A program made the translations under genes and the position numbers. DNA of 64,000 nucleotides, taken from assembly GCF_003918875.1 (NCBI RefSeq), contig NW_025766836.1, positions 744,001-808,000 on the forward strand, given 5' to 3'. Below the pieces are notes generated by a model, which searched no databases, was not told where the DNA came from, and was given only the letters and a program-made list of their open reading frames with translations. Positions 10,475 through 48,895 of the stretch are shown piece after piece (within the stretch, counting starts at the first letter, position 1; each line of letters starts with the position of its first letter). The stretch comes from Haliotis rubra. Its lineage: Eukaryota.

Positions 10475-10690
10475 CTTACCTGATTTGTGTGAAAAGTCCT
10501 ATGAAAATCGCGGGGATAACTGGCAAGTTGTGATATGGAAACTTTCTAAACGTTACTTTTGGTTACATATCATCCCATAACAACTGTACCACGCTATGAT
10601 TAGACATTCCATTGGTTAAATGCTGCAGTTTGACTGGTTGAGTCGAGTGTTTGCTGTAGGAGGTTTTAACTTCCCGGCATGCAAAACGCG
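10475..10690 (-). promoter_or_regulatory. DLC2 non-coding exon 1 donor and promoter module (X-box-like, CCAAT, SBS/ZNF143-like)
   Basis: Minus-strand donor CAG|GTAAGTG at 10479; ATCCCATAACAAC 10572-10584; ATTGG 10611; TTCCCGGCATGC 10671. Confidence 0.75.
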
Positions 10691-10945
10691 CGCATCCCCA
10701 AATTCATTCATGACAACCAGCGAGCAGGTAATAGACTACGGTGCATGCAATTTCGACTTTAGACCTGCGGGTTGCATGTCAAAGCACATATGTTGAACGC
10801 TTGAATGATCCCGAACTTCAGAATAAGCTGTGTGAAGCTGAACTGTGTTACCTTAAAGGATGTAGTTGATATTCACCGAAAGTGATATACTAGTACCTCC
10901 TAGATAACTGTGATATGAGATTTGACTGACGCTGGCAGTAAGATA

Positions 10946-12334
10946 CAGTACAACCACAAATTATTTAGAATTTAAAGATTGTAATTTTTTTTTTTCACTC
11001 ATTACTCACGTATTAAATGTGAATATTAGCAGAACATAACTCCAGTGAGTGAGTGAGGTGTATGGTTTTACGCCGCTTTTAGCAATATTCCAGCAATATC
11101 ACGGCGGGGACACCAGAAATGGGCTTCACACAATGTGCCCATAACTCCAGATTTAAAGACAGGTGAACAGTTAGTATTTTGTCAAGTCACCATGGGCAGC
11201 AATGCAGGCTTCAGTTCGGCGGGGCATACTACTGATCAAAGAAGTTAGAAAGTCGTGGTCCATGCTGTCCCAATATCGGACCACCTCTTCTTTCATTTCA
11301 GCAATATTTGTCAGATTTTTCTTATTGACACTTTCCTCCATAAGTTCCCAAACATTTTCTATTGGATTTAGGTCAGGGCTATAGCTTGGCCAATCTAATA
11401 ATGTCATATTGTGGGTCCGAAACCAGGCCTGTGAATGCTTTGAACGATGTTTTGGGTCGTTGTCCTGCTGAAAAATCCATTTCCATAGAACACGTGAGCA
11501 GATGGAAGTAAAGGTCCTTGGAGAATATCTGTGTACCACTCACTGTTCATATTCCCTTCAAATACACAGAGGGGCGTTGCCCCTAACACAGATATGCCAC
11601 CCCACACGTTTAATTTCGGACTGTACTAAATTTGGGCGCTGATACAAAGGTTTTTCAGTTTGTTTGGTCCAGAATTTCAGTGTATTAGGAAACAGCCACA
11701 CAGAACTTTCATCTGAGAAAATCACATTGTCCCAGTTAAAATTTCTATGCTGTAAGCACCAGTTCAACCTTTGCACCTTTTGTTCAGATTTCATGATCGG
11801 TGATGGGTTTCCTCGACGTTTCTGCCAACCCATTGCATGCAGCTCAATTCTAATTGACTCCTTACCCACAGCCACAGTTCCTCTATCAATCATACCCAGC
11901 CTTAAGTTTTCTAAACTCCTTCGTTTGTTTTTAGAAACAAGAATACCAAGCCGCCTCCTGTCACCGACAGTCAATTTTCTGGGCCTACCTGCGCCTCCCT
12001 GGTGCTCAATGCCATATCCATTTGCAATATTTTTCAAAACACGATAAACAGTGGACAAAGGGATGCCTGTTCTACTTGAAATCACTTTAGCTGATCTGAT
12101 GTCCTTGTTATAATACTCTAAAATCAACTTCCTCTTCTCTAAATCATCCATACTGAGGATCACTGAAAATGTCGTCTGCTAGCAAGTAAACAAAGGGGAT
12201 AACTCTTCACAAACTAATGAACGGAGTTGTCTCTCTTGAATGAAACCAAGCACTTGATAGCTGGTCAAGGTTGTTTATACTAGAAATCCAATTAACTATA
12301 TTCCTAAAATTCTCAATAATTTCTGGTCATACTA
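10946..12334 (-). mobile_element. Tc1-family (DD34E) DNA transposon with frameshifted transposase (11171-12151)
   Basis: ~28-bp imperfect TIRs CAGTACAACCACAAATTATTTAGAATTT / AAATTCTCAATAATTTCTGGTCATACTA; TA TSD (10944-45, 12335-36); GRPRK, VIFSDES, FQQDND(34)E of SPDLNPIE; two frameshifts; empty site in the DLC3 unit (~23990). Confidence 0.93.
11046..11139 (-). mobile_element. 5'-truncated SINE A nested in Tc1
   Basis: 11-bp TSD CATAACTCCAG (11035-11045, 11140-11150). Confidence 0.85.
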
Positions 12335-12601
12335 TAATAGTACGGCAGGTGTTTCGGTCATTAGCAATACTTGTTTTCAGTGTAGGTATTTCTTTCTCGT
12401 TTGGGGCACAAACGGAATCACACACGCTTGTAAACGATGTGTTACATATCCTCGTCATGCTCCTTCCTAACGTGAACTGACAAGAATCCATTATTCGCTA
12501 TGCTTTGAAATTGCGCAGATTCATCACAATGAATAAGTGATGGTTGTGTAACCCCCTCTGAAATGTATTCCGGTTATGCGGCGCGTCCTCTTAATGTTAG
12601 A

Positions 12602-12830
12602 GACGAGACCCGTGATGGTTATAATTGATCTTCAGTAACCCATGCTTGTCGTAAGAGGCGACTAACGGGATCGGGTGGTCAGGCTCGCTGACTTGGTTGA
12701 CACATGTCATCGTATCCCAATTGCGCAGATCGATGCTCATGCTGTTGATCACTGGATTGTCTGGTCCAGACTCGATTATTTACAGACTGCCGCCATATAG
12801 CTTGAATATATATTTAAACTCATTCACTCA
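12602..12830 (+). mobile_element. SINE family B (V-SINE/RUDI-like)
   Basis: CCCATGCTTGTCGTAAGAGGCGACTAACGGG V-domain-like core; TSD CTCTTAATGTTAGA on both sides. Confidence 0.8.
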
Positions 12831-13440
12831 CTCTTAATGTTAGAAGATAACCGCACAGGGAATAAATACACTGTTTAGAACGCCGTAAATATCTGGTTTG
12901 GGTGTGAATCTGTGATTCCATGTTACAATTTGTTTTGGGGGCTGGTAGCTTAGTGGATAAAGCGTTCGCTCGTCACGCCGACGGGCCCGGGTTCTATTCC
13001 CCGCGCATGGGTACAATGTGTCAAACCCTTTTCACTCACTCACTCACTAACTCACTCGCTCACTACAATTTGTTTTATAAATGGGTTTTGATATGGCTTC
13101 CCTTGACAAAGCAGCCAAGAGTGTGATAGAAAGTTTCGTATAGGAAATTGGTTGTATGGTGGTTGCCTATCTTTGTTCAACCACAGTAAGTCGTATTATT
13201 CTATCATGGCCGCGCACATGTGTACATCATAAGCACGTGATATGCCAGGGGCCTGCCATATTTTTCTTTCGTCAGTTTGTTTCTATTGCATTTGTGATAG
13301 AATGAATTAATAAGCAATGCGAGGGTATATTTAGTTGTGATAGCGTTTTATCAAAGGGTACCTCCGTATTTTAACCGCACAATATCGAAGTACACTGTGT
13401 GGGAAATTGGTTGTATTGCCCATCTTGGTTCAACCCCAGT

Positions 13441-13606
13441 GGGGGCTGTGGGGTAGCCTAGTGGTTAAAGCGTTGGCTCGTCACGCCGAAGACCCGGGTA
13501 CGAATCCCCACATGGGTACATTGTGTGAAACCCATTTCTGGTGTCCCCCGCCGTGATGTTGCTGGAATATTGCTAAAAGCGGCGTAAAACCAAACTCAGT
13601 CAGTCA
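13441..13606 (+). mobile_element. SINE family A, full length
   Basis: Head to tail complete; TSD TCAACC(C/A)CAGT. Confidence 0.8.
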
Positions 13607-15461: not shown

Positions 15462-15731
15462 TCATCCTGATTTGAAGAGGAGAACGGCCACCTGTCCCAG
15501 ATAGAAGTAGACGAAGTGCTTGGTCTCGTGGGTGACGTAGCTGCCGAAGTTGCGGCCGACAATACAATGCCATGTGGGGTTGTACTTCTTGTCGAACTCT
15601 TTTTTAATGAATGCAGCAATGTCCTTCTCAATGTTGAACTTCTCCATAGCTTGAGTGGCGCATTCACAAGCGTCCTGCTGCATGTCCTCGCTCATGTCAG
15701 CGTTCTTGATGACGGCTTTTCTCTCAGACAT
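15462..15731 (-). CDS. DYNLL: Dynein light chain LC8 (DLC3)
   Basis: Intact 89-aa LC8 ORF; same acceptor context as DLC2. Confidence 0.97.
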
Positions 15732-16049
15732 GGTGTTCTGAAGAAGAAAAACGTTTTCCTGCGAATCAAAAATGTAACTTGCGAACGATTTGAAAACAGA
15801 GTGTGTGATTGGGTTTAGTTTTATGCCTCTTTAAGCAATATTCCAGCAATATGAAGGCGGGGGGACACCAGAAATGGGCTTCACACATTGTACCCACGTG
15901 GAGAATCGAACCCGGATCTTCGGCGTGACGAGCGCTCGCTTTAACCACTAGGCTTCTGCACGATATTTGGATTCTTCTTGTCGTTTTCCATGCGTAAAAT
16001 TGAGAAGGTACAATAACTTCTTTGCCTAGAATTAGTGAAGGCTAGGACG

Positions 16050-19000
16050 GCGGGCTGGTTGAGAACATGAATGGAAGGCGGACTGGTTGAGAACATGAAT
16101 GGAAGGCGGACTGGTTGAGAACATGAATGGAAGGCGGACTGGTTGAGAACATGAATGGAAGGCGGACTGGTTGAGAACATGAATGGAAGGCGGACTGGTT
16201 GAGAACATGAATGGAAGGCGGACTGGTTGAGAACATGAATGGAAGGCGGACTGGTTGGTAACATGAATGGAAGGCGGACTGGTTGGGAACATGGACGGAA
16301 GGCAGATTGGTTGAGAACATGGATGGAAGGCGGACTGGTTGAGAACATGAATGGAAGGCGGACTGGTTGAGAACATGAATGGAAGGCGGACTGGTTGAGA
16401 ACATGAATGGAAGGCGGACTGGTTGAGAACATGAATGGAAGGCGGACTGGTTGAGAACATGAATGGAAGGCGGACTGGTTGGTTGGAACATGAATGGAAG
16501 GCAGACTGGTTGAGAACATGAATGGAAGGCGGACTGGTTGAGAACATGAATGGAAGGCGGACTGGTTGAGAACATGAATGGAAGGCGGACTGGTTGAGAA
16601 CATGAATGGAAGGCGGACTGGTTGAGAACATGAATGGAAGGCGGACTGGTTGAGAACATGAATGGAAGGCGGACTGGTTGAGAACATGAATGGAAGGCGG
16701 ACTGGTTGAGAACATGAATGGAAGGCGGACTGGTTGAGAACATGAATGGAAGGCGGACTGGTTGAGAACATGAATGGAAGGCAGACTGGTTGAGAACATG
16801 AATGGAAGGCGGACTGGTTGAGAACATGAATGGAAGGCGGACTGGTTGAGAACATGAATGGAAGGCGGACTGGTTGAGAACATGAATGGAAGGCGGACTG
16901 GTTGAGAACATGAATGGAAGGCGGACTGGTTGAGAACATGAATGGAAGGCGGACTGGTTGAGAACATGAATGGAAGGCGGACTGGTTGAGAACATGAATG
17001 GAAGGCGGACTGGTTGAGAACATGAATGGAAGGCGGACTGGTTGAGAACATGAATGGAAGGCGGACTGGTTGAGAACATGAATGGAAGGCGGACTGGTTG
17101 AGAACATGAATGGAAGGCGGACTGGTTGGTAACATGAATGGAAGGCGGACTGGTTGAGAACATGAATGGAAGGCGGACTGGTTGGTAACATGAATGGAAG
17201 GCGGACTGGTTGAGAACATGAATGGAAGGCGGACTGGTTGGTAACATGAATGGAAGGCGGACTGGTTGAGAACATGGATGGAAGGCGGACTGGTTGAGAA
17301 CATGAATGGAAGGCGGACTGGTTGAGAACATGAATGGAAGGCGGACTGGTTGGTAACATGAATGGAAGGCGGACTGGTTGAGAACATGAATGGAAGGCGG
17401 ACTGGTTGGGAACATGAATGGAAGGCGGACTGGTTGAGAACATGAATGGAAGGCGGACTGGTTGAGAACATGAATGGAAGGCGGACTGGTTGAGAACATG
17501 AATGGATGGCGGACTGGTTGAGAACATGAATGGCAGGCGGACTGGTTGAGAACATGAATGGAAGGCGGACTGGTTGAGAACATGAATGGAAGGCGGACTG
17601 GTTGAGAACATGAATGGAAGGCGGACTGGTTGAGAACATGAATGGAAGGCGGACTGGTTGGTAACATGAATGGAAGGCGGACTGGTTGAGAACATGAATG
17701 GAAGGCGGACTGGTTGAGAACATGAATGGAAGGCAGACTGGTTGAGAACATGAATGGAAGGCGGACTGGTTGGGAACATGAATGGAAGGCAGACTGGTTG
17801 GTAACATGAATGGAAGGCGGATTGGTTGGGAACATGGAATGGAAGGCAGACTGGTTGGGAACATGAATGGAAGGCAGACTGGTTGAGAACATGGATGGAA
17901 GGCAGATTGGTTGGGAACATGGATGGAAGGCGGACTGGTTGGGAACATGGATGGAAGGCAGATTGGTTGAGAACATGAATGGAAGGCAGACTGGTTGAGA
18001 ACATGGATGGAAGGCAGACTGGTTGAGAACATGGATGGAAGGCGGACTGGTTGAGAACATGGATGGAAGGCATATGGATGGAAGGCAGATTGGTTGGGAA
18101 CATGGATGGAAGGCAGACTGGTTGGAGAACATGGATGGAAGGCAGATTGGTTGGAACATGAATGGAAGGCAGACTGGTTGAGAACATGGATGGAAGGCAG
18201 ACTGGTTGAGAACATGGATGGAAGGCGGACTGGTTGAGAACATGAATGGAAGGCAGGATTGGTTGGAGAACATGGATGGAAGGCAGATTGGTTGAGAACA
18301 TGGATGGAAGGCAGACTGGTTGGAACATGGAATGGAAGGCAGACTGGTTGAGAACATGAATGGAAGGCAGACTGGTTGAGAACATGGAATGGAAGGCAGA
18401 TTGGTTGAGAACATGAATGGAAGGCAGACTGGTTGGAACATGAATGGAAGGCAGATTGGTTGGGAACATGGATGGAAGGCGGACTGGTTGAGAACATGAA
18501 TGGAAGGCGGACTGGTTGAGAACATGAATGGAAGGCGGACTGGTTGAGAACATGAATGGAAGGCGGACTGGTTGGGAACATGAATGGAAGGCGGACTGGT
18601 TGAGAACATGAATGGAAGGCGGACTGGTTGAGAACATGAATGGAAGGCGGACTGGTTGAGAACATGAATGGAAGGCGGACTGGTTGAGAACATGAATGGA
18701 AGGCGGACTGGTTGAGAACATGAATGGAAGGCGGACTGGTTGAGAACATGAATGGAAGGCATGGAAGGCAGGTTGGTTGAGAACATGGATGGAAGGCGGA
18801 CTGGTTGAGAACATGAATGGAAGGCGGACTGGTTGGTAACATGGATGGAAAGCGGATTGGTTGGGAACATGGACGGAAGGCAGATTGGTTTGGGAACATG
18901 TTAGGTAGGCAGATTGGTTTGGGAACATGTTAGGTAGGCAGATTGGTTGGGAACATGGATGGAAGGCAGATTGGTGTGGGAACATGTTAGGTAGGCAGAT

Positions 19001-19650
19001 CGGTTGTGAACATGGATGGAAGGCAGATTGGTTTTGGAACATGTTAGGTAGGCAGATTGGTTGTGAACGTGCTTTGAAGGCAGATTGGTTTGAGAACATG
19101 GAAGGAAGGCAGATTGGATTGGAACGTGGACGGAAGGCAGATTGGATTGGAACATGAATAAAAGGCAGATTGGTTGGGAACAATGATGGAAGGCAGACTG
19201 GATTGGAACGTGGATGGAAGGCAGATTGGATTGGAACATGAATAAAATGCAGATTGGTTTGAGAACATGGAAGGAAGGCAGATTAGTTGGGAACGTGGAT
19301 GGAAGGCAGATTGGATTGGAACGTGGATGGAAGGCAGATTGGTTGGGGACGTGGATGGAAGGCAGATTGGATTGGAACGTTGATGGAAGGCAGATTGGTT
19401 GGGAACATGGATGGAAGGCAGATTGGTTAGGAACATGGATGGAAGGCAGAGCTTGATTGGGAACATGGATGGAAGGCAGATTGGTTGGGAACGTGGATGG
19501 AAGGAAGATTGGTTGGGAACGTGGATGGAAGGCAGATTGGTTGGGAACATGAATAAAAGGCAGATTGGTTCGGAACGTGCTTTGAAGGCAGATTGTATGC
19601 GAATTGTATGCGAATATGTATGGAAGGCAGATTGGATGAAAACATGGAAA
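16050..19650. repeat. 3.6-kb 28-bp minisatellite (GAACATGAATGGAAGGCGGACTGGTTGA)n in DLC3 intron
   Basis: Near-perfect units 16050-17800, more diverged toward 19650; same family as 8390-9003. Confidence 0.96.
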
Positions 19651-20840: not shown

Positions 20841-20978
20841 NNNNNNNNNNNNNNNNNNNNNNNNNNNNNNNNNNNNNNNNNNNNNNNNNNNNNNNNNNNN
20901 NNNNNNNNNNNNNNNNNNNNNNNNNNNNNNNNNNNNNNNNNNNNNNNNNNNNNNNNNNNNNNNNNNNNNNNNNNNNNN
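20841..20978. other. Assembly gap
   Basis: Run of N; CACTAGAAACACTC on both sides. Confidence 0.99.
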
Positions 20979-22193: not shown

Positions 22194-23489
22194 CCTACAA
22201 GTACGGAATGTTACCAACGAATACACATGTTACATACGAATCTACCGTTTATCCCGTGATATCATGCAAACTTTTACTTTTATCACCAAGATCAACTTGT
22301 TTTCTGACATTTCAATCAAAAAGAATTCATTATATATCACTATAATAAGGTCTAAACCACGAACTGCAGTGCATCCCTGAATAGAACATTAATATTCGTG
22401 CAGAAAATGTAAAATACACTTACTAATTACCAATATGTTGTCTGGTCTCATCTATGATGACTTCCAAATGGAACACATGTCACGTGTTGTCATTCCACCA
22501 ATCTATTTTAATGTGATCAATTGTTGGTACTTTTGGGAGTTAAAATTTACTTACGAATACAGGTTATTTTGTGTGATATCTTCGTAAACACAGCACAGAA
22601 AATGTTCAGATGTAGCACACGTATATATTGAGGCCCTTTGCACTTGAACTTCGGATATCATTCACTAATGTGTTCATTTGTGGAAACAGCAACATATTCA
22701 ATGGTATTTGTAGGTAACCTGATTTTTTTTACCAAATCAGACTTTGATTTTCTAACATTTTTTCAGATTAAGAAATATTATGTAACGCCATTGCATTTGA
22801 GTACTTTACATATTAATGCTGTAAAAAGTAATACAAAACATAACCTTGTGTTGCATTCACATAAATTGACAGAGTCATTGAAAACTGTATTCGTAGGTAA
22901 CGCAAAAAAATACCACTTGAAAACAAATTACCAAAATTACGAATTAAACCCTAGACAAAATCATTTCAGGGGATTTATTCATGAAATATTTGGCAATCAG
23001 ATTACGTTGTTCACTTTTCGTTGGAATCGACCATATATGGTTGTATGTGCACTTTAAACAATTTCCAATAAAACATACTATAACTCCGACAACCGGCTTC
23101 ACATAAGGAAATCGTCCGGAACGACCTCTGGCGTGACATTACCTAAACTACCATGTATATGATTTTCCCTTCCGCCCAACCCTCTCTGCAATGCAAAAAG
23201 CTCTAATGAAACGACTTTGGATTTGCCTCCGGTTTTGAATCTCCTATATCATTCGGGATACTTTTCAGTTTAGATTGAGTCAGATCTATTTGTTTCTATC
23301 AAAATTACATATTTTCAGCGAATGAGCATTTAGACATCATTGAGGCAGACATGGACAGTAGCACAACAGTGATAGGCGTGACGGTAAATATAATATAAGC
23401 TCGATAGAACTAGAAATCTATATTACAACATTGATTCAACATTTCAGTCTAAATGTGTTTATATACGAATGTGGGGACAGTTTAGTACA

Positions 23490-23715
23490 CTTACCTGACT
23501 TGTGTGAAAAATCCAATGAAAATCTCCGGATAACTGGCAAGTTGTGATATCGAAACCAAATTATTTCATTTCGATGTTAATTTTTGTTACATATCGTCCC
23601 ATAACAACTGTACCACGCTATGATTAGACATTCCATTGGTTAAATACTGCAGTTTGACTGGCTGAGTCGAGTGTTTACTGTAGGAGGTTTTAACTTCCCG
23701 GCATGCAAAACGCGC
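23490..23715 (-). promoter_or_regulatory. DLC3 exon 1 donor and promoter module
   Basis: Donor CAG|GTAAGTG at 23494; GTCCCATAACAAC 23596-23608; ATTGG 23635; TTCCCGGCATGC 23695. Confidence 0.75.
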
Positions 23716-24317
23716 GCATCCCCAAACTCATTCATGACAACCAGCGAGCTCTATGCAGGTAATAGACTACGACGAATAATTATGTGTATGATGCATACAA
23801 TTTCGAGTTTAGTCGGCGTGTTGCGTGTCACAGCACATATGTTGAACGCTTGAATGATCCCGGAACTCAATTCAGAATAAGCTGTGCGAAGCTGAACTGT
23901 TTTACAATATAGGATGTAGTTGATATTCACCGAAAATGATATACCTGCTACATAACTGTGATACGAGAGTTAGCTGGCGCGGCAGTTAGATAATAGTAGG
24001 CCAGGTGTTTCGGTCATTAGCAATGCTTGTTTTCAGTGTAGGTATTTCTTTCTCGTTTGGGGCACAAACGGAATTACACACGCTTGTAAACGATGTGTTA
24101 TATATCCTCGTCATGCTCCTTCCTAACTGCCGTGATACTGCTGGAATATTGTTAAAAGCGGCGCAATACTAAACTCACTCAGTCCTAACGTGAACTGACA
24201 AGAATCCATTATTCGCTATGCTTTGAAATTGCACTGGTTCATCACAATGAATAAGTGAATGGTTGTGTAACCGCTTTGAAATGTATTCCGGTTATACGGC
24301 GCGTCCTCTTAATGTTA

Positions 24318-24524
24318 NNNNNNNNNNNNNNNNNNNNNNNNNNNNNNNNNNNNNNNNNNNNNNNNNNNNNNNNNNNNNNNNNNNNNNNNNNNNNNNNNNN
24401 NNNNNNNNNNNNNNNNNNNNNNNNNNNNNNNNNNNNNNNNNNNNNNNNNNNNNNNNNNNNNNNNNNNNNNNNNNNNNNNNNNNNNNNNNNNNNNNNNNNN
24501 NNNNNNNNNNNNNNNNNNNNNNNN
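24318..24524. other. Assembly gap
   Basis: Run of N at the DLC3/DLC4 unit junction. Confidence 0.99.
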
Positions 24525-25347
24525 ATTCTGAAAGGGAGTCTGTGCTTCTTGCCGCACTCCAGCATCCACGCCTTGTAATGTAAGTAACCGAGCATGGACT
24601 AGACGATCCAGTGATATGTGTTGGGTCAACAGGGTGCAAGATCACCAAACGCATCTTTGACAATAAAAGTCGCCTCGGGCGTCAAACAAATATTGCTGGG
24701 ATGTTGCTGGGATTCATTCTAATCCGGAATCAAAGCAATGGACATATTTTATGAAAAGTTACTGGAACAGAATACACATTCATGCAAAGTTAGATTTAAA
24801 TTATTTATTTTCCCCAAAACTTAACAATAGGTAAAACTGAGATTGTAACATGAACGATAAACAACTTATTTCAATATTTTCTTTTGACATATCTTGTTAG
24901 GATTTGAAACGGGTTGACGTCTTGGTGTCAGCTAAATGGTGTTTGACCTGATTTTAAACAGAAGGTTTATTTACTTTAGAACGATACACATCAATACTTT
25001 ACAACAAAACGACAAACAAACTGATCATCTGTGAACATTCATAAAAGTCTGAGATCAAAGACGTATCAAGGGATCAGATAGGAAGATAAGACAAAGGTGC
25101 AAAATGTCATTTAAAAGGCACAAAGTATTATTTTCATTGGATGTGATATGGTCTGTAAAATTTTGCATTGTTCACTTATACAGAGAAAATAATATTTTGT
25201 ATTTCAATATTCCCAAGAATTTCAACAAAGGTATTTATTTGTGTGAAATATTTATGCATTATATCCTAGATGGGAGATATGGACTTGAGGACTTGGCAGC
25301 CGTAATGTTATCTATTGGTTTCATAATCCATCTTCATGGTTCATTGT

Positions 25348-28144: not shown

Positions 28145-28311
28145 CTTACCTGATTTGTATGGAAGTCCTATGGAAATCGCCAGACAAGTTGTGATATCGA
28201 AACCAAAGTATTTTATTTCGATGTTACCTTTGCTTACATATCGTCCTACAACAACTGCATCACGCTAATATCTGAAATTCCATTGGTTAAATACTGCAAT
28301 CTGAGTGGCTG
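28145..28311 (-). promoter_or_regulatory. DLC4 exon 1 donor and proximal promoter (degenerate X-box, CCAAT); SBS displaced to 30437
   Basis: Donor at 28149; GTCCTACAACAAC 28243-28255; ATTGG 28282. Confidence 0.68.
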
Positions 28312-30430
28312 CCATGCTTGGGGCGGATACAGGGACTGGGCAGATGTCCACCTTGGCAGAATTTCTTCAACCTAAACAATGGGACAATGAGAACGGTGGA
28401 TGCCCATCAGATGCCGTTATTTGAAAAATATCCCCGGTAGTTCTAGTCTAATGTATTCTAGCAATGTAAGCTTTGTTTATGCGTTTATGGTATGATAACT
28501 GATGCCATTTGATCCTATTTCTGTGTTTTGTTACCTTGACATGTGACTAGTTCATGTAACAATGTGATGTCTTTTGACCTATTACATTAAAAACCAAAGT
28601 TTGATTTATTTGAATCCCTAAATTAAATCAACCTAACTTTGCCATTGCTAGAAAAGTCTAAACAAATTGCTTAGATAAGTATACAGTTTTAACTTTAGAG
28701 CACATGCTGTATTTGTTATGCAGCAATGAAGTTCCGTTCATATGCTCAAAACAGCATCAAGGCAATTAAAATTGCAATACAATACAGCGATTACTACTCT
28801 CTTGCTGTAACCCATGTTTGGTGGTGTAAACCTACACCTGTTTATTTGTTTATTCACTTTATGGTCAGTTAATGAAATTATAACAGGTATAATTAGTAGT
28901 AACACCACTCAGATTTCCCGACAAAGGTCCCCATATGTCTGGAGTAAATACTCAACATTATAAATTAAGGTCTGGTGTGGCATATGTATTACGTGTTATG
29001 TAATATGCGCATGGATGTGCGGCAAGAGGAATTATCAAACAAAACCAAACAAACATCAATCAAAGGATTAACCGATAACATAACACGTTAATTGATTAAT
29101 AACTTCTATCTTGCACAAAGGATTTGTCAAAAGGTTGTGTACAGTGTATATATATCTAGATTTACTAACGTATACTGAATACACCCTGTCGTAAAGTGCC
29201 TGTGTAAAAACAACGCCCTTCCTTCAAAGGATTGTGGGGCGGTAGGGTAGCCTAGTGGTTAAAGCTTTGGCTCGTCACGCCGAAGACCCGGATTCGAATC
29301 CCCACATGGGCACAATGTGTGAAGCCCATTTCTGGTGTCCCCCGCCGTGATGTTTCTGAAATATTGCTAAAAGCGGCGTAAAACCAAAACTCAGTCAGTC
29401 CAAGGATTGACCGGCAATACGTTGATTGATTGCTCATTGTTGTATAACTAATTACTTTCAAAATAATGGTGGACATCATGCAAATAGTTGTCACATATGC
29501 GATCTTGGGTGACCAATGAGACTATACACCAATGTGAAAAACCTGAAACAGTCACGTGACCAGTAGAGAAATTATCACTAGTTATTACTTGTTTGAGTGG
29601 CAGTTAGAAGCTGTTTTCTAACGGCATTAGCATCTACACCGAAACGTCACATCGATTGCAATAAAGACGTTGTCTGTCCATAAAAACGTCCCTGTTTATC
29701 ACCAGTTATAACGATTTATACAACTTTAGCATATTTCACTGTTAAAAGACAGATGATATGGAACAGATTGGCACATCGTTCCTTTATGTGGATATTGATG
29801 GATACATTCCTCGATCAAGGTAAGGGCCTGATGTTATTGTTATAAATTTATTCGGTATTAATTTGAATATCTGCATTTTGTTTACATTCTTTTCTTGTAG
29901 CATCCCACAGAATCATTCTACTTCATTTCTTTGCGCCGTGAAGTTTAATGAGACAGACAACATACACAAGGTCGAACTTAGGATGCGTGTGTGAAATATG
30001 ATTCACGAAGGCAATTTATAAAATGTTTAGATATTTCAGTCATGTTATAAATTCACTAAACAGATCGTTCCAAAATCCATAAACATATATCAATAAATAT
30101 TTAGGATTATAAGACAAAGATGTGAAGCCGTACATTGACTTTGACATATTTTCCCACTGGCAGATGAAGTTAAACTTCAATTTGTTTTCATTTGTTATCA
30201 TAATAATGAAGATGGAAATATAAATGAATAAATGAAATTGCATCTTCTTTGTTGATCAAAGTCAGGATATACATATCATATACATATACTACCAATTGAA
30301 CTTACGGGTGGCGCATTTAGAGATAGCAACTCAGTCAAGAATTCTGGGATATCGTCCGGGTACTCACGGGGGATAAACAATAACAAAAGCAACAACCAGT
30401 CCCAGGGGAATTGCTCTGGATCAGTGTCCC
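28312..30430. other. ~2.1-kb insertion in the DLC4 promoter (second copy 34796-36760 in DLC5)
   Basis: Interrupts the CCAAT-SBS segment that is contiguous in DLC2/3/6. Confidence 0.8.
29235..29400 (+). mobile_element. SINE family A, DLC4-specific
   Basis: Flanked by CAAAGGATT / CAAGGATT; empty site CTTCAAAGGATTACCGG at ~35681 in the DLC5 copy. Confidence 0.85.
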
Positions 30431-32204: not shown

Positions 32205-32474
32205 TCAAACTGATTTGAAGAGGAGAACGGCCACCTGTCCCAGATAGAAATGGATGAAGTGCTTGGTCTCGTGGGTGACGTAGCTGCCAAAGTTGCGGCC
32301 GACAATACAATGCCATGTGGGGTTGTACTTCTTGTCGAACTCCTTCTTGATGTATGCAGCGATGTCCTTCTCAATGCTGTACTTCTCCAAAGCTTGAGTG
32401 GCGCTATCAATAGCGTCCTGCTGCATGTCCTCGCTCATGTCAGCCTTCGTGATGACAGCTTTTCTGTCAGTCAT
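32205..32474 (-). CDS. DYNLL: Dynein light chain LC8, divergent paralog (DLC5)
   Basis: Intact 89-aa ORF, identical to DLC4 except residues 2, 3 and 7. Confidence 0.96.
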
Positions 32475-34642: not shown

Positions 34643-34795
34643 CTTACCTGATTTGTATGGAAGTCCTATGAAAATCGCCTGGCAAGTTGTGATATCGAAA
34701 CCAAATTATTTCATTTCGATGCTACCTTTGCTTACATATCTGTATCACGCTAATATCAGAAATTCATTGGTTAAATGCTGCAATTTGACTGGCTG
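34643..34795 (-). promoter_or_regulatory. DLC5 exon 1 donor and proximal promoter (X-box deleted, CCAAT retained); SBS displaced to 36765
   Basis: Donor at 34647; CTTACATATC|TGTATCACGC junction at 34740/34741; ATTGG 34766. Confidence 0.68.
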
Positions 34796-37700
34796 TCATG
34801 CTTGGGGCGGACACAGGGACTGGGCAGATGTCCACCTTGGCAGAATTTCTTCAACCTAAACAATGGGACAATGAGATCGGTGGATGCCCATCAGATGCCG
34901 TTATTTGAAAATATCCCCGGTAGTTCTAGTCTAATGTATTCTAGCAGAGTAAGCTTTTTTATGCGTTTATTGTATGATGACTGATGCGATTTGATCCTAT
35001 TTCTGTGTTTTGTTACCTTGACATGTGACTAGTTCATGTAACAATGTGATGTCTTTTGACCTATTACATTAAAAACCAACGTTTGATTTATTTGAATCCC
35101 TAAATTAAATCAACCTAACTTTGCCATTGCTAGAAAAGTCTAAACAAATTGCTTAGGTAAGTATACAGTTTTTAACTTTAGAGCACATGTTGTATTTCTT
35201 TTGCAACAATGAAGTTCCGTTCATATGCTCAAAACAGCATCAAGGCAATTAAAATTGCTATACAATACAGCGATTACTACTCTCTTGCTGTAACCCATGT
35301 TTGGTGGTATAAACCTACACCTGTTTATTTGTTTATTCACTTTATGGGCAGTTAATGTACTTATAACAGGTATAATTAGTAGTAACACCACTCAGATTTC
35401 CTGAAAAAATGTCTGGAGTAAATACTCAACATTATAAATTAAGGTCTGGTGTGGCAAATGTATTACGTGTTATGTAATATGCGCAAGGATGTGCAGCAAG
35501 AGGAATTATTCGCTGAGTTAAAAAACAAACATCGATCAAAGAATTAGCCGATAACACGTTGATTGATTCATTACTTTTATCCAACGGATTTATCAAAATG
35601 TAGTGTTTATGTGCGTAGATTTACTAACATATACTGAATACACGCTGTCGTAAAATGAGTCTGTAAAAACAACGCCCTTCCTTCAAAGGATTACCGGAAA
35701 ATACGTTGATTGATTGCTCATTGGTGTCTAACTAAATTACTTTCAAAAGAATGGTGGACATCATGCAAATAGTTGTCACATATGCGATCTTGGGTGACCA
35801 ATGAGACTATACACCAATGTGGAAATCCTGAAACAGTCACGTGACCAGTTGAGAAACTATCACTAGTTATTACTTCTTTGAGTGGCAGTAAGAAGCTGAT
35901 TTGCTAACGGCATTAGCATCAACAGCGAAACGTCACATCGATTGCAATAAAGACGTTGTCTGTCCATAAAAACACATTCCTGTTATAACGGTTCAAACAT
36001 GTTTTGCATATTTGACTGTTAAAAGGGACATGGAACATGTTTCTTTGTCAGCAGCAGATGAATGGCACATCGTTCTTTATGTGGATATTGATGGATACAT
36101 TCCTCGAACAAGGTAACGGCTTGATGTTATTGCTATAATTGTATTCGGTTTTAACTTGAATATCTTCATTTTCTTTATATTCTTTTCTTGTAGCATCCAA
36201 TAGAATCATTCCACTTCATTTCTTGCGCCGTGAAGTTTGATGAGACAGACAACAGACAACAAGGTCGCTCTTAGGGCGTGTGTGTGAAATATGATAAACG
36301 GAGGCAATTTATAAAATGTCTAGATATTTCAGTCATGTTATAAATTCACTAAACAGATCGTGTACATTTTATGAAGATCCAAAATGCATAAAAATATATG
36401 AATAAATTATTTAGGATTATATGACAAAAATCTGAAGACGTATATTGACTTCGGGGCTTTTTTTCAGTCCTAACATATTTTCCCACTGGCAGATGAAGTT
36501 TAACTTCAATTTGCTTTTCATTTTTTATCATAATAATGAGGATGGAAATATTAATGAGTAAAAGAGATTGCATCTTCTCTGTTGATCACTGTCAGGATAT
36601 ACATATCATATACATATACTACCAATTGAACTTACGGGTGGCGCATCAGAGATCGCAACCCAGTCAAGAATTCTGGGATACCATCCGGGTACTCGCGGGG
36701 GATAAACAATTATAAAAGCAACAACCAGTCCCAGGGAATTCCTCTGGATCAGTGTCCCTTTCCCTTCCCGGCATGCTAAACGGGCGCATCCCCAAACTCA
36801 TTCATGACAACCAACGAACTGTATGCAGACTAAGACGAATATTTAGGTGTATGGTGCATGAAATTTCGACTTTAGCTGACGGGTTGTGTGTCAAAGCACC
36901 TATGTTCAACGTTTGAATGATCCTGGAACTTCAGAATAAGCTGCGTGAAGCTGAACTATCTTATAATGTGGTTGATATACACCGAAAGTGATATACCTCC
37001 TATATAACCGTGACACGAGAGTTGCTGACCCCTTAAGATATCAGGTCGCCATGTGTTTCGGTCATTAGCAATGCTTGTTTTCAGTCTACTTATTTCTTTC
37101 TCGTTTAGAGTACAAACGGAATCACACACGCTTGTAAACCATGTGTTATATATCCTCGTCATGCTCCTACCTAACTGCCGTGATATTGCTGGAATATTGT
37201 TAAAAGCGGCGCAATACTAAACTCACTCAGTCCTAACGTGAACTGACAAGAATCCATTATTCGCTATGCTTTGAAATTGCGCAGATTCATCACAATAAAA
37301 AAGTGAATGGTTGTGTAACCGCTTTGAAATGTATTCGGGTTATACTCACTCACTCTCTCGCTCACTCGCTCCGCCGCCATATAGCTGGAAAATTGCTGAG
37401 TGCGGCGTACAACTAAACTCACTCACATTTGTTTTATAAATGGGTTTTGATACCATGCCTTACCGTGTCAAAGGAAACAAGAGTGTGATAGAAAGTTTCG
37501 TGTGATAAATTGGCTGTGTGGTGATTGCCTATCTTGATTCAACCACAGTGGGTCGTATTATTCTGTCGTGGCCGCGCACATTGAAACGCAAACGATGTAT
37601 TTATCAGATGCACGTGATATGCCACGTGACTGGCTGTTTCTTGCGTCAGTTTGTTTTTAGTTTTCATTTCACGTTGTTAGCTTGATGTTGGAAGACAGAC

Positions 37701-45984: not shown

Positions 45985-46552
45985 CTTGCACCTTTATCAT
46001 TTCTTCCTATATGTGATCCTTTGATGCGTCTTTGATCTCAGATGCTTATGAATGTTCGCTGATGATTATTTTATGTGTCGGTTTGTTGTAAAGTATTGAT
46101 GTGTATCTTTCTAAAGTAAACAAGCCTTTTGTTTACAGTCACGTCAAATATCATGTAGCTGACACCAAGATGTCAACCCATTTTATATCCTAACAAGATA
46201 TGACGAAAGAAAATATTGAAACATGTTGTTTATCTGTTATATCGCAATCTCTATTTTACCTATTGTTAAGTTTGGAGGAAAATAAATAATTTAAATCTAA
46301 CTTTGCATGAATGTGTATGCTGTTTCAGTTAGTAATTTTTCATAAACAATGTCTACTGTTTTGATTCTGGGTTCGAATAAATCACGGCAAAATTTGTTTG
46401 ACGTCCGAGGCGACTATTATTGCCAAGGATGTGTTTGGTGATTTTGCACCCTAGTGATTCAATACATGTCACAGGATCGTCCAGTCCATACTGATTATCT
46501 ACATTACAAGGCGTGGATGCGGGAGTGTGGCATGAAACTAGAAACACAGACA
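45985..46552 (+). pseudogene. Orphan inverted LC8 distal 3' UTR and downstream flank (no CDS)
   Basis: Reverse complement of DLC3 14820-15215 and DLC4 24535-25100, including the AATAAA (~46280). Confidence 0.85.
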
Positions 46553-47253
46553 CTGTCATGTCGGAATCATCCTGCCTTGCAACAATATTAACAATATTAA
46601 AGCACCAGAAATGGGCTTCACACATTGTACCCATGTGGGGAATGGAGCCCGGGTTTTCGGTGTGACGAGCGAACGCTTTAACCACTAGGCTACCCAAGCG
46701 CCCGGATTTACAGTAGGTTTGGATTTCACACAGAACAGTAGAAAGTCAACGATGTTGCATTTTTTATTGGTCAACACATAATAAATAGGTAAAAACATAT
46801 AATATAATGCCTCAGAAATATTCCACATATATAATACAAAAGGTGGAATTCATTAATATGCATCCCTTCTTTAAATCATTATAATTGTTCAGTGGCAGTT
46901 GAGCTAAAAATGACAAAATATGTCAATGACTGGTACATGCTCTTGTGACGTCACGGATAAGGTGCAGTGCATGAAAGTCACGTTCCAAAGTCCTGAACTA
47001 TTTTCTTTCATCCACTTCCAGTAACACGTCCTGTTGAAGGCCAAGAGACAGAACGATCGCAGACTGTCTTTAATGCCAGATCTGTTTAATGTTTCGGGCA
47101 TTGTATTCAAGTATATGTTCTTCCATACAATTTAAGACTATTTCATTTATTAAGGTAATGCCCACTCTTTGGTTAAGTGATGGTTACTACGTACTATTAG
47201 AGGTCAGACGATAGAAGGACGTTATAGTCATGGCAATCCGTAGGAAACAAAGG

Positions 47254-47523
47254 TTATCCTGATTTGAAGAGGAGAACGGCCACCTGTCCCAGATAGAAGT
47301 AGATGAAGTGCTTGGTCTCGTGGGTGACGTAGCTGCCAAAGTTGCGGCCGACAATACAATGCCATGTGGGGTTGTACTTCTTGTCGAACTCCTTCTTGAT
47401 GTATGCAGCGATGTCCTTCTCAATGTTGTATTTCTCAAGGGCTGCTGTGGAGCAGTCTACAGCGTCCTGCTGCATGTCCTCGCTCATGTCAGCGTTCTTG
47501 ATGACGGCTTTTCTCTCAGACAT
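47254..47523 (-). CDS. DYNLL: Dynein light chain LC8 (DLC6)
   Basis: Intact canonical-like 89-aa LC8; acceptor T-tract TAG ending 47528; AATAAA (minus strand) at 46763-46768. Confidence 0.97.
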
Positions 47524-47815
47524 GATTCTAAAAAAAATAATTTCATGTTAGTATCATTTAAGTTTGGTCATTGATATTGTTACTGTTGTACGTGTGTTGT
47601 ACAGATACATTGTTTAATTATTGTTTAACGCCGTACTCAGCGATATTCCAGCTATATGGCGGCGGTGTGTAAATAATCTCGTCTGGACCAGACAATCCAG
47701 TGACTAACAGCATGAGCATCGGATACGAGCAGATAAACAAACACTGCTTAGCCATATAATGAATATCTTTCAATCATATCTGTCCACATTGTAGCACTTC
47801 CTTATTTACACTGGT

Positions 47816-48082
47816 GACCCGTGAAGATCCGGGGTAGAATAGGTCTTCAGCAACCCATGCTTGCCACAAAAGGCGACTATGCTTGTCGTAACAGGCGACT
47901 AACGGGATCGGGTGGTCTGGCTCTCTGACTTGGTTGACACATGTCATCGGTTCCCAATTGCGCAGATCGATGCTCATGTTGTTGATCACTGGACTGTCTG
48001 GTCCAGACTCGATTATTTACAGACCGCCGCCATATAGCTGGAATATTGCTGAATGCGGTGTAAAACTAAACTCACTCACACA
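47816..48082 (+). mobile_element. SINE family B (V-SINE/RUDI-like) in DLC6 intron
   Basis: TSD TATTTACACTGGT; other copies at 50900-51012, 51355-51600, 54440-54680, 56827-57090, 57180-57305. Confidence 0.82.
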
Positions 48083-48656
48083 CTATTTACACTGGTACAG
48101 CTCGTATATAACAACGTCTTGTCTTCGGTTTGTAGAAGCTAACCAGGCGGTGATGGAACCGCAGACATCCCCTTGAGTGTGAGTTTGGTATTCCACCGCT
48201 TTTAGCAATATTCCATTAATATCACGGCGGGGGACACCAGAAATGGGCTTAACACATTGTGCCTATGTGGGGAATCAAATCTGGGTCGTCGGCGTGAAGA
48301 GCGAACGACTTGACCACTAGGCTACCCCATCGCCCCACATTCCCTTGAATGAAACATTCATTGTGTTTAAATATTTAAATTATCAAGAGTAAGTGAGCGA
48401 GTGTACTCCGCTTTCAGCAATATCATGGCGATGGACACCACAAAAAGGCTTCACACATTGTACCTATGTGGGGATCTGAACCAAGAGAAGACGTCCACGT
48501 GACGAGCGAGCGCTGTTCCCAGTGAGCTACCAAACGGCCGTTAAGCCGTAACAAATAAAACTAAAAGCGGTTTTAAAAGGTTTCAGGCATGTACGCTTTG
48601 TTTGCAGCATAGCAGTGTAACTATTCATAACAGAAAGGGAAGAGATAATATGTACA

Positions 48657-48895
48657 CTTACGTTTTATGCTGTGTTGAAACTGGTTCCAATGTTAATCTC
48701 GAAGTGATTGCATTAATGTCACAACTTCAACTGCAGGTCAATATATACGCACCGGGGCAAATGTCAGGTAATAATCCCATGGCAACCACGCCACGCTATG
48801 AAAAGCAATTCTATTGGTTAATCGCCGTATGGTGACTGGCTGAGGCAGGTGTACTCTTTAGGGGGTTCTAACTTCCCGGCATGCCAAAAGCGCGC
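48657..48895 (-). promoter_or_regulatory. DLC6 exon 1 donor and promoter module
   Basis: Donor GTAAGTG at 48661; GTTGCCATGGGAT X-box (48774-48786); ATTGG 48813; TTCCCGGCATGC 48873. Confidence 0.78.

What the first reader, a model, noticed from the sequence alone, without database searches (positions are those of the whole stretch)
10572..48884. Rigidly spaced X-box / CCAAT / SBS promoter grammar shared by LC8 paralogs
Seen: upstream of the exon 1 donors of DLC2, DLC3 and DLC6 is the same module. The gap from the 13-bp X-box-like site to ATTGG is exactly 26 bp, and ATTGG to TTCCCGGCATGC is exactly 60 bp (10611/10671, 23635/23695, 48813/48873). This holds in DLC6, whose intron and flanks do not otherwise align with DLC2/3. 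CCACGCTA and GACTGG motifs between the sites are also kept. Known: GTTGCCATGG is an RFX X-box core (ciliary genes), CCAAT binds NF-Y, and TTCCC..CATGC resembles the Staf/ZNF143 SBS motif. Inference: a spacing-constrained, enhanceosome-like ciliary promoter.
Basis: partly seen in the sequence, partly recalled or inferred. Interest (0 to 1): 0.7.

Follow-up and report, generated by a model that had tools for sequence, protein, structure and literature searches.

The report
Conserved promoter block of abalone LC8 genes
Three of six tandem abalone dynein light chain (LC8) genes keep the same ~125-base block just upstream of their first exon, which is most likely their inherited core promoter; the identical motif spacing follows from gap-free common descent, and it is not shown to be a special cilia-gene "grammar".

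Summary
ATTGGTTAA and TTCCCGGCATGC sit exactly 60 bp apart at 10611/10671, 23635/23695 and 48813/48873, and an X-box-like 13-mer lies 26 bp before each ATTGG. The LC8 genes concerned are on the minus strand, so in gene sense the order is SBS-like, CCAAT, X-box-like, then 92-112 bp to a conserved donor GTAAGTGTAC.

The block is an island of homology:
- DLC6 versus DLC2: 94/127 identical with no gaps, between flanks that do not align.
- DLC2 versus DLC3: 4/127 changes in the block against 130/717 in the flanks (p = 2e-6).

This supports purifying selection on a proximal promoter inherited by tandem duplication.

The "grammar" reading is only partly supported:
- There are only two independent lineages.
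- Absence of indels is marginal (P about 0.06).
- The X-box match (12/14) is of a quality found at chance frequency (161 hits versus 165 expected).
- The SBS-like site fits only the core.
- No TSS or expression data could be obtained.
- The block is absent from the LC8 loci fetched for three other molluscs.

In DLC4/5 a 2.1-kb insertion splits the block, and the X-box/CCAAT half has since decayed. Earlier first-stage notes on this same stretch already flagged that decay.

The parts
10569..10695 (-). Conserved promoter block of DLC2. In gene sense it reads GCGCGC .. GCATGCCGGGAAGTTA .. CTCAACCAGTCA .. TTAACCAATGG .. TCATAGCGTGG .. GTTGTTATGGGAT.
   Evidence: Versus DLC3 there are 4 changes in 127 nt and no gaps, while the flanks are 76-87% identical with 14 indels.
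23593..23719 (-). Conserved promoter block of DLC3.
48771..48897 (-). Conserved promoter block of DLC6, the diverged copy.
   Evidence: ungapped 125-nt match, E = 3e-21; 94/127 identical to DLC2. The flanks do not align.
10572..10584 (-). X-box-like site GTTGTTATGGGAT. The equivalents are 23596-23608 (GTTGTTATGGGAC) and 48774-48786 (GTTGCCATGGGAT). Only the left half-site plus ATGG is kept.
   Evidence: The match is 12/14 to GTHNYYATRRNAAC, a quality that occurs at chance frequency.
10611..10619 (-). CCAAT box, TTAACCAAT in gene sense. The equivalents are 23635-23643 and 48813-48821.
   Evidence: This 9-mer is invariant in DLC2, DLC3, DLC4, DLC5 and DLC6.
10667..10682 (+). SBS-like core TTCCCGGCATGC inside an invariant 16-mer TAACTTCCCGGCATGC. 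The equivalents are 23691-23706 and 48869-48884. The 12-mer alone is also at 30437-30448 and 36765-36776.
10589..10599 (-). Unassigned invariant 11-mer TCATAGCGTGG. The equivalents are 23613-23623 and 48791-48801.
10631..10642 (-). Unassigned conserved block CTCARCCAGTCA. The equivalents are 23655-23666 and 48833-48844.
10470..10479 (-). Inferred exon 1 donor, CAG|GTAAGTGTAC. The equivalents are 23485-23494 and 48652-48661. A GTAAGTGGAC variant is at 28141-28150 in DLC4 and at 34640-34649 in DLC5.
   Evidence: This 10-mer is conserved inside sequence that otherwise does not align. There is no RNA confirmation.
7793..8062 (-). DLC2 CDS including the stop codon. All 89 aa lie in one exon, with an acceptor 6 nt before the ATG.
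   Evidence: The gene call carries PF01221.
15462..15731 (-). DLC3 CDS including the stop codon.
47254..47523 (-). DLC6 CDS including the stop codon. The 3'UTR extends at least to 46766.
   Evidence: Contigs from probable RNA runs cover 46766-47285 at about 98% identity.
28237..28308 (-). Decayed proximal half of the block in DLC4. The X-box has become GTTGTTGTAGGAC, the CCAAT box is kept and the 26-bp gap is kept.
   Evidence: One search gives 12/69 changes versus DLC3, against 35/409 in the flank (p = 0.03).
34726..34793 (-). Decayed proximal half of the block in DLC5. The X-box is removed by a 13-bp deletion, and there is a 1-bp deletion next to CCAAT.
28309..30430 (.). Insertion of about 2.1 kb that splits the DLC4 block between the CCAGTCA element and the SBS-like element. 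DLC5 has the same insertion at about 34794-36758.
   Evidence: The insertion is shared by DLC4 and DLC5 at 86-91% identity and is otherwise unique in the window, apart from one SINE.

Best explanation
The ~125-bp block is the proximal promoter of the ancestral abalone LC8 (DYNLL-type) gene. It was copied along with the gene by tandem duplication and has been kept by purifying selection in DLC2, DLC3 and DLC6.

The block lies directly upstream (minus strand) of a short non-coding exon 1. That exon is spliced, across a 1.1-7.7 kb 5'UTR intron, to a single coding exon.

The block is a dense cluster of at least six conserved elements. The CCAAT box is the most credible factor assignment (NF-Y). 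The GTTGYYATGGGA element may be an RFX half-site. The invariant GCATGCCGGGAAGTTA element may bind a ZNF143-like or other factor. Three further elements (GCGCGC, CTCARCCAGTCA, TCATAGCGTGG) are unassigned, and one of them could serve ASCIZ/ATMIN, the known LC8 regulator.

The identical 26-bp and 60-bp distances exist because the block has taken no indel since duplication. That fits general constraint on a compact multi-factor promoter. It does not by itself show helical-phase or enhanceosome geometry.

What is shown: homology, excess conservation, position next to a conserved splice donor, and decay after disruption in DLC4/5. What is inferred: promoter function, TSS position and factor identities.
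For: 1. Island of homology. blastn between the DLC6 and DLC2 loci finds only the CDS exon and the ungapped 125-nt block. Exon 1, the 5' part of the intron and the upstream flank do not align better than shuffles (z from -0.2 to 1.6).
2. DLC2 versus DLC3. The block has 4/127 changes and no indels. The flanks have 130/717 changes and 14 indel events. Fisher p = 2.3e-6.
3. Position. The block ends 92-112 nt upstream of a conserved donor GTAAGTGTAC, and each CDS exon has an acceptor 4-6 nt before the ATG.
4. Natural disruption. In DLC4/5 a shared 2.1-kb insertion separates the two halves. The proximal half then diverged faster than its flank (12/69 versus 35/409, p = 0.03), the X-box was mutated in DLC4 and deleted in DLC5, and DLC5 lost 1 bp next to CCAAT.
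5. It is not a repeat. In a DNA run the depth over 48576-49127 is about 30-77, against 1e5-1e7 over the SINE bins. No other copy exists in the window, even allowing 2 mismatches in the 12-mer.
6. It is not an RNA gene. There is no Rfam hit, and the covariation term is 0.02.
7. DLC6 is probably transcribed. Two runs that look like RNA but are only guessed to be RNA hold its 3'UTR at about 98% identity.
Against: - There is no TSS or exon 1 evidence. Only assembled contigs were available, and none of three probable RNA runs covers 48576-49311, which includes the predicted DLC6 exon 1.
- CDS dS between DLC6 and DLC2/3 is only about 0.20. Either the coding exons have been homogenised by gene conversion, or the flanks were replaced. 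An old conversion tract covering the block therefore cannot be excluded.
- The grouping of identities into discrete footprints is not statistically significant (permutation p = 0.12-0.29).
- The block was not found in the LC8 loci fetched for Mytilus, Bulinus or Elysia, so there is no deep conservation to lean on.
Confidence: 0.72

Rival explanations
1. One reading: a spacing-constrained, enhanceosome-like ciliary promoter in which RFX (X-box), NF-Y (CCAAT) and a ZNF143/Staf-like factor (SBS) bind cooperatively. The exact 26-bp and 60-bp distances would themselves be under selection.
For: - All three motifs are invariant or nearly so: 28/30 positions are identical between DLC2 and DLC6, against 66/97 elsewhere in the block.
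- There are no indels despite 33 substitutions. Using the locus's own ratio of 0.084 indels per substitution, P(0) = 0.06, or 0.044 when DLC2 versus DLC3 is added.
- After the 60-bp distance became about 2.1 kb in DLC4/5, the X-box decayed.
- There is literature precedent. SXY modules have fixed order, orientation and spacing (PMC7866136). NF-Y shows preferred distances to RFX5 (29 bp) and ZNF143 (36 bp) in human (PMC4889920). The Y-box is enriched in RFX1-3 peaks of multiciliated ependymal cells (PMC7498320).
Against: - The X-box-like match is of chance quality (161 observed versus 165 expected at 2 mismatches or fewer), and its right half-site is missing.
- The 3' part of the SBS-like site is not in register and differs among the copies.
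- There are only two independent lineages.
- The spacers are themselves 68% identical, so spacing and sequence constraint cannot be separated.
- The arrangement was not found at any other gene: the metagenome pattern scan gave 0 hits, three other mollusc LC8 loci lack it, and it is absent within 4.3 kb upstream of the DLC1 coding exon.
- The distances differ from the published human ones.
- No evidence links these paralogs to cilia-specific expression.
Confidence: 0.12
2. The block is a patch of gene conversion, or leftover homology between paralogs, with no regulatory function of its own.
For: The coding exons show low dS (0.15-0.23) among DLC2-DLC6 while the surrounding DNA of DLC6 does not align. 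This suggests conversion operates in this array. The clustering of matches into footprints is not significant.
Against: - A conversion tract should be near-identical, not 74% identical.
- The block is 6-fold less diverged than both flanks in the independent DLC2/DLC3 comparison (p = 2e-6).
- It decays specifically in the copies whose promoter was split.
- It abuts a conserved splice donor.
Confidence: 0.08
3. The block, or its SBS-like end, drives a divergent plus-strand transcript as a bidirectional promoter. Alternatively, the block is itself transcribed as part of a longer 5'UTR or a non-coding RNA.
For: - The SBS-like site points along the plus strand, and ZNF143 sites are enriched in bidirectional promoters, where they suffice to drive transcription in both directions (PMC3082894).
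- In DLC2-DLC5 the sequence to the right of the site is conserved and ends in a donor-like GCAG|GTAATAG (10727).
- The 12-mer stays intact in DLC4/5 although it is detached from the rest of the block.
Against: - The conservation on that side is shared only by the recently duplicated units and is absent in DLC6.
- The DNA to the right of the DLC2 block holds a decayed Tc1/mariner transposase, not a host gene.
- No contig from the probable RNA runs covers 48576-49311 beside DLC6.
- There is no Rfam family and no structural covariation.
Confidence: 0.08

Closest known systems
MHC class II/I W/SXY module (RFX5 complex + CREB + NF-Y + CIITA/NLRC5 enhanceosome)
   Same: An X-box-type site and an inverted CCAAT (ATTGG) lie on the same strand in the order X then Y, a few helical turns apart. 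Their distance is identical in every copy. The sites form part of a compact multi-element promoter (PMC7866136, PMC4889920).
   Different: - Relative to the LC8 genes the unit is flipped, with CCAAT distal and the X-box proximal.
- No S or X2 boxes were identified.
- The centre-to-centre distance is about 35 bp, against the reported 29-bp peak.
- To my knowledge RFX5/RFXAP/RFXANK/CIITA are vertebrate factors.
- The gene class is a dynein light chain, not antigen presentation.
- Binding is untested.
X-box (RFX/DAF-19) promoters of ciliary genes, for example C. elegans xbx-1, dylt-1 and dylt-2
   Same: A GTTGCC AT ... element lies within about 100 bp of the start of a dynein light-chain gene. 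For comparison, dylt-2 has GTTGCC AT GACAAC at -78 (PMC3112216).
   Different: - Here only the left half-site is present, and the right half is GGGATT/GGGATG instead of RRNAAC.
- In DLC2/3 the left half is GTTGTT.
- The C. elegans LC8-type gene dlc-1 is not among the direct DAF-19 targets listed in that paper.
- No RFX dependence is shown here.
ASCIZ/ATMIN-DYNLL1 feedback regulation
   Same: ASCIZ/ATMIN is the experimentally established transcriptional control of LC8 genes from Drosophila to mammals, and it acts through the proximal promoter (PMC5963919, PMC4197704). The unassigned conserved elements in the block could be its sites.
   Different: The papers read give no ASCIZ DNA motif, so it could not be tested. 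The presence of an abalone ASCIZ gene was not checked.
Staf/ZNF143 binding site (SBS1)
   Same: TTCCCGGCATGC has CCCR at positions 3-6 and C at position 12, and it resembles TTCCCATTATGC of SBS1 (PMC3082894, PMC3627581). A preferred NF-Y-ZNF143 distance is known in human (PMC4889920).
   Different: - The 3' third (A-YY-GCG) is not matched in register and varies among the copies.
- The distance to CCAAT is about 58-66 bp, not 36.
- No ACTACA extension is present.
- Whether a mollusc ZNF143 orthologue exists was not tested.

Membership tests
RFX X-box | A 14-bp imperfect palindrome, GTHNYY AT RRNAAC, made of two half-sites. | tested here: inconclusive
   The match is 12/14 in all three copies. 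The left half plus AT fits, but the right half (GGGATT, GGGATG or GGGACG) does not. Matches of this quality number 161 in the window against 165 +/- 15 expected.
RFX X-box | Conservation of the site among related promoters. | tested here: met
   GTTGYYATGGGA is kept in DLC2, DLC3 and DLC6. It is mutated in DLC4 and deleted in DLC5, the copies with the split promoter.
RFX X-box | Location close to the TSS or ATG, with RFX-dependent expression in ciliated cells. | not testable with these tools
   The site lies 92-112 nt upstream of the inferred exon 1 donor. No TSS, tissue expression or binding data were obtainable, because one search returned only contigs.
NF-Y CCAAT box | A CCAAT pentamer with the flanks Y-R-R-CCAAT-S-R. 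| tested here: met
   DLC2 and DLC3 have TAACCAATGG, with all flanks fitting. DLC6 has TAACCAATAG, with one flank mismatch. TTAACCAAT is invariant in five genes. The consensus is quoted from my own knowledge of NF-Y sites.
NF-Y CCAAT box | Typical position of about -60 to -100 from the TSS. | not testable with these tools
   The TSS is unknown. The box lies 131-151 nt upstream of the exon 1 donor, which would be compatible with a 40-80-nt exon 1.
Staf/ZNF143 SBS | An 18-bp site with CCCR at positions 3-6 and C at position 12 (PMC3082894). | tested here: met
   TTCCCGGCATGC meets both features in all five copies. The criterion carries little information.
Staf/ZNF143 SBS | The 3' part of the 18-mer, as in TTCCCATTATGCACCGCG (PMC3627581). 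| tested here: not met
   The sequence following ATGC is AAAACGCG in DLC2/3, CAAAAGCG in DLC6, TAAACTAA in DLC4 and TAAACGGG in DLC5. GCG is not in register and the stretch is not conserved.
Staf/ZNF143 SBS | Presence of the factor in the organism and binding by it. | not tested
W/SXY enhanceosome module | Fixed order, orientation and spacing of the S, X, X2 and Y boxes relative to the gene (PMC7866136). | tested here: not met
   The order X then ATTGG holds on the plus strand, but the LC8 genes are on the minus strand, so the unit is inverted relative to the gene. No S or X2 box was recognised. The spacing is constant among the copies, but these are paralogs.
Spacing-constrained composite element ('grammar') | Indels are excluded more strongly than substitutions, in independent lineages or at unrelated genes. 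| tested here: inconclusive
   There are 0 indels with 33 substitutions, against 2.8 expected (P = 0.06). Only two independent lineages exist, and there are no instances at unrelated genes.

The most novel reading that the evidence does not exclude
The X-box-like site and the inverted CCAAT, 26 bp apart, would be a true RFX/NF-Y composite element in a mollusc dynein light-chain promoter. Fixed-geometry X-Y cooperation, known from the vertebrate MHC SXY enhanceosome and hinted at for RFX1-3 in multiciliated cells, would then be an ancient bilaterian feature of ciliary gene promoters. A third, ZNF143-like partner would be locked 60 bp away. DLC4/5 would be a natural spacing mutant that lost RFX control.
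Probability: 0.1. Interest if true: 0.65.

Novelty: new member of a known kind. Interest (0 to 1): 0.3.

Why it matters
If the block is the working promoter, it gives a compact, testable regulatory unit of about 125 bp for an invertebrate LC8 gene family. It also comes with a built-in comparison: three intact copies and two copies split by an insertion, whose X-box/CCAAT half is decaying. That comparison could show whether LC8 paralogs in a tandem array have partitioned expression, for example ciliated tissue or testis versus general expression. It could also show whether an RFX-NF-Y partnership operates outside vertebrates. As it stands, this is an ordinary case of paralogous promoters sharing conserved sites. 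It is useful for annotation, because the genes are on the minus strand and have a 5'UTR intron. It does not show a new regulatory principle.

Tried and rejected
- **RNA evidence for TSS and exon 1.** The single run search and the single read-laying run returned only assembled contigs, with no raw reads. The probable RNA runs cover the DLC6 3'UTR and CDS but not 48576-49311. The differences in the cross-species DNA contig over the block were not listed. This line was inconclusive.
- **Orthologous loci by exact protein look-up.** DLC2, DLC3 and DLC6 are on record only in the window's own assembly, and DLC1 is not on record. The 90% clusters hold 331-2513 LC8 proteins from all eukaryotes, so no Haliotis orthologues could be picked out.
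- **Other molluscs.** The LC8 loci of Mytilus trossulus, Bulinus truncatus and Elysia chlorotica, each with 10 kb upstream of the called gene start, have no SBS core, no TAGCGTGG and no significant blastn match to the block. This is a weak negative, because their first exons are unknown.
- **DLC1 promoter.** It was not found within 4.3 kb upstream of the DLC1 coding exon, a stretch that includes 2.2 kb beyond the window start. The gene model runs further out.
- **Metagenome scan.** The pattern ATTGGTTAA-N51-TTCCCGGCATGC gave 0 hits.
- **RNA gene or RNA structure.** Rejected, because there is no Rfam hit and no covariation.
- **Repeat or TE origin of the block.** Rejected on single-copy depth and the lack of other copies.
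- **Divergent host gene.** Rejected for DLC2, because the neighbouring DNA is a Tc1/mariner remnant.
- **Discrete footprints.** A permutation test on run lengths was not significant.
- **ASCIZ motif.** None was found in the papers read.
- **Earlier scan notes by words (X-box, CCAAT).** These returned only other paralog-family promoters and no second instance of this arrangement.

Full report
**What is in the window**

The window is QXJH01000275.1:744001-808000 of assembly GCA_003918875.1. This follows from exact protein look-ups and a 100% match of locus L001 to the window. An earlier scan note calls the genome abalone.

The window holds six LC8-type dynein light chain genes. In each, all 89 aa are encoded in one exon (PF01221):

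| Gene | Strand | CDS |
|---|---|---|
| DLC1 | + | 2138-2407 |
| DLC2 | - | 8062-7793 |
| DLC3 | - | 15731-15462 |
| DLC4 | - | 25617-25348 |
| DLC5 | - | 32474-32205 |
| DLC6 | - | 47523-47254 |

Each coding exon has an acceptor 1-6 nt before the ATG, so exon 1 is non-coding.

**Check of the observation**

ATTGGTTAA is at 10611, 23635 and 48813. TTCCCGGCATGC is at 10671, 23695 and 48873, 60 bp start to start. The 13-mer at 10572, 23596 and 48774 lies 26 bp before ATTGG. CCACGCTATGA and GACTGGYTGAG are also shared.

The genes are on the minus strand. In gene sense the block therefore reads: GCGCGC, GCATGCCGGGAAGTTA, CTCARCCAGTCA, TTAACCAAT, TCATAGCGTGG, GTTGYYATGGGA. It is followed by 92-112 nt and then the conserved donor CAG|GTAAGTGTAC.

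GTTGCCATGG is present only in DLC6; DLC2 and DLC3 have GTTGTTATGG.

**The N gaps**

Gap 20841-20978 lies inside the DLC3 5'UTR intron. Gap 24318-24524 lies between the DLC3 block and the 3' end of DLC4. Neither touches a block.

Sequence on both sides of each gap is colinear, in the same order and on the same strand, with the paralogous DLC2, DLC4 and DLC5 units. The spacing across gap 2 (about 440 bp) resembles the 400 bp in the DLC4-DLC5 unit. Continuity is therefore plausible but unproven. Linking block 2 to the DLC3 CDS depends on continuity across gap 1. I did not fill either gap.

**Is it more than chance, and more than neutral homology?**

Between the DLC6 and DLC2 loci, blastn finds three things: SINE/TE fragments, the CDS exon (90.6%) and one ungapped match of 125 nt at 75% (E = 3e-21).

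Over 127 columns, DLC2 and DLC6 share 94 identities and no gap. Exon 1, the first 150 nt of the intron and the 150 nt upstream of the block do not align better than shuffled sequence (z from -0.2 to 1.6).

In the younger DLC2/DLC3 pair the block has 4 changes in 127 nt and no indel. Its two flanks have 130 changes in 717 nt and 14 indel events, giving Fisher p = 2.3e-6.

The block is single-copy in a DNA run of a related organism. Depth there is about 30-77, against 1e5-1e7 over the SINE bins. It has no other copy in the window. It matches no Rfam family, and its consensus fold has no covariation.

The block is therefore a selectively maintained, non-repetitive element that is probably not an RNA. 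It abuts the inferred first exon, so a proximal promoter inherited with the gene is the best reading.

**The natural experiment in DLC4 and DLC5**

TTCCCGGCATGC is also intact at 30437 and 36765. The matching CCAAT remnants are about 2.1 kb away, at 28282 and 34766. A shared insertion (86-91% identical between DLC4 and DLC5, otherwise unique in the window) sits between the CCAGTCA element and the SBS-like element.

The detached proximal half has diverged faster than its own flank: 12/69 against 35/409 versus DLC3, p = 0.03. The X-box-like site is mutated in DLC4. In DLC5 it is removed by a 13-bp deletion, and DLC5 has also lost 1 bp beside CCAAT.

This fits relaxed constraint once the block was split, and so supports function of the intact block. 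First-stage notes s1-347373 and s1-347394 had flagged this decay, and I confirmed it from the alignment.

**How strong is 'rigid spacing'?**

DLC2 and DLC3 are recent copies, so there are only two independent lineages.

Alignable flanks among DLC2-DLC5 show 24 indel events for 285 substitutions. With 33 substitutions between DLC2 and DLC6, 2.8 indels would be expected, and P(none) = 0.06. In the DLC2/DLC3 pair, indels and substitutions are depleted together.

Identity is 28/30 in the three named motifs but still 66/97 elsewhere, with three more conserved elements. The grouping of identities into blocks is not significant by permutation (p = 0.12-0.29).

The data fit a compact promoter under general constraint. 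They are compatible with a spacing constraint but do not demonstrate one.

**Factor identities**

*CCAAT box.* TAACCAATGG and TAACCAATAG fit NF-Y flanks well. TTAACCAAT is invariant in five genes.

*X-box.* The sites match GTHNYYATRRNAAC at 12/14, with the right half-site missing. Matches of this quality occur 161 times in the window against 165 expected, so the assignment rests only on conservation of GTTGYYATGGGA. Validated C. elegans dynein light-chain X-boxes have both halves (PMC3112216).

*SBS.* TTCCCGGCATGC meets CCCR at positions 3-6 and C at position 12 (PMC3082894) and resembles TTCCCATTATGC (PMC3627581). Its 3' part is not in register and differs among the copies, and the site points away from the LC8 gene.

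*ASCIZ/ATMIN.* This is the established LC8 regulator (PMC5963919, PMC4197704). It could not be tested, because no DNA motif was available.

**Comparison with known systems**

The closest analogue is the W/SXY module, which has fixed order, orientation and spacing of the X and Y boxes and cooperative RFX/NF-Y binding (PMC7866136). Human data show preferred NF-Y distances to RFX5 (29 bp) and ZNF143 (36 bp) (PMC4889920). The Y-box motif is enriched in RFX1-3 peaks of multiciliated cells (PMC7498320).

Here the X-like site and ATTGG have the SXY order on the plus strand, but the unit is inverted relative to the LC8 genes. The distances differ (about 35 and about 58-66 bp), and no S or X2 boxes are seen. 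The block may work like an X-Y composite, but membership is not established.

**Limits**

The RNA check failed to give a TSS. Only Logan contigs were available. Two runs that are only guessed to be RNA hold the DLC6 3'UTR at about 98% identity, but nothing covers 48576-49311. The differences in the one cross-species DNA contig spanning 48634-49462 (about 90% identity) were not listed.

No orthologous Haliotis loci could be fetched. Three other mollusc LC8 loci, the 4.3 kb upstream of the DLC1 coding exon and a metagenome pattern scan all lack the arrangement.

CDS dS of about 0.2 between DLC6 and DLC2/3 sits oddly with flanks that do not align. It suggests gene conversion in the coding exons, so an old conversion of the block cannot be fully excluded.

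**Verdict**

This is a conserved paralog promoter block with a credible CCAAT box, a weak X-box-like half-site and an SBS-like core. The fixed spacing is explained by gap-free descent, and evidence for a spacing constraint is only marginal. Interest is modest.

Noticed in passing
window 8370-9063 and 16045-19595: The 5'UTR introns of DLC2 and DLC3 hold 28-bp minisatellites. Many units carry a gene-sense CCAAT (ATTGG on the plus strand): 12 in DLC2 and about 39 in DLC3, mostly 28 bp apart. The younger DLC3 variant unit (54 copies) instead carries GACTGGTTGAG, the same 11-mer as in the DLC2 promoter block (10632-10642). This could be a CCAAT array acting as an intronic enhancer, or it could be coincidence.
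   Followed up: partly
window 28309-30430 and about 34794-36758: A ~2.1-kb insertion shared by DLC4 and DLC5 splits their promoter block. Near its SBS-proximal end it carries donor-like sites on the minus strand (CCC|GTAAGTTC at about 30303 and 36632). These might provide a replacement first exon driven by the retained SBS-like half.
   Followed up: partly
window 10704-10717, 23728-23741, 30475-30488, 36798-36811: A second X-box-like element, TCATTCATGACAAC, has a perfect right half (AT GACAAC). It lies about 20 bp beyond the SBS-like site in DLC2-DLC5 and is absent in DLC6.
   Followed up: no
window 7793-8062, 15462-15731, 25348-25617, 32205-32474, 47254-47523: Synonymous divergence among DLC2-DLC6 is low (dS 0.15-0.23; 0.02 for DLC4/5), although the introns and flanks of DLC6 do not align with the others. 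This suggests gene conversion or strong codon constraint on the coding exons. DLC1 is the outlier, with dS of about 0.46-0.68.
   Followed up: partly
window 11171-12163 (minus strand): Decayed Tc1/mariner-type transposase, with HTH_Tnp_Tc3_2 and DDE_3 in two adjacent ORFs, just upstream of the DLC2 promoter block.
   Followed up: yes
window 52083-53523 (minus strand): Glutamine synthetase gene (a 378-aa ORF with Gln-synt_C, E = 1e-72), next to the LC8 array.
   Followed up: yes
L004:1190-1203, L005:256-269, L006:442-455, L008:577-590: In contigs of an unidentified organism (one ENA metagenome assembly and several Logan runs), a canonical X-box GTAACTATGGCAAC lies about 200 bp upstream of a 97-aa LC8 gene that is 97% identical to DLC6. 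This is an independent hint that some LC8 genes are RFX targets.
   Followed up: no
window, many sites, for example 8201-8284, 13447-13513, 46607-46690, 48239-48322: A tRNA-derived, SINE-like repeat occurs at ten or more sites, including inside the LC8 introns. One copy reaches the Rfam tRNA gathering score (13447-13513). These copies account for nearly all the non-genic similarity between the DLC units.
   Followed up: partly
window 45986-46536 versus 24546-25102: An inverted copy (83% identical) of the region 3' of DLC4 lies just beyond the DLC6 3'UTR. Contigs from probable RNA runs cover 46000-46300 at higher depth than the DLC6 3'UTR. This could be another transcript or a longer UTR.
   Followed up: no
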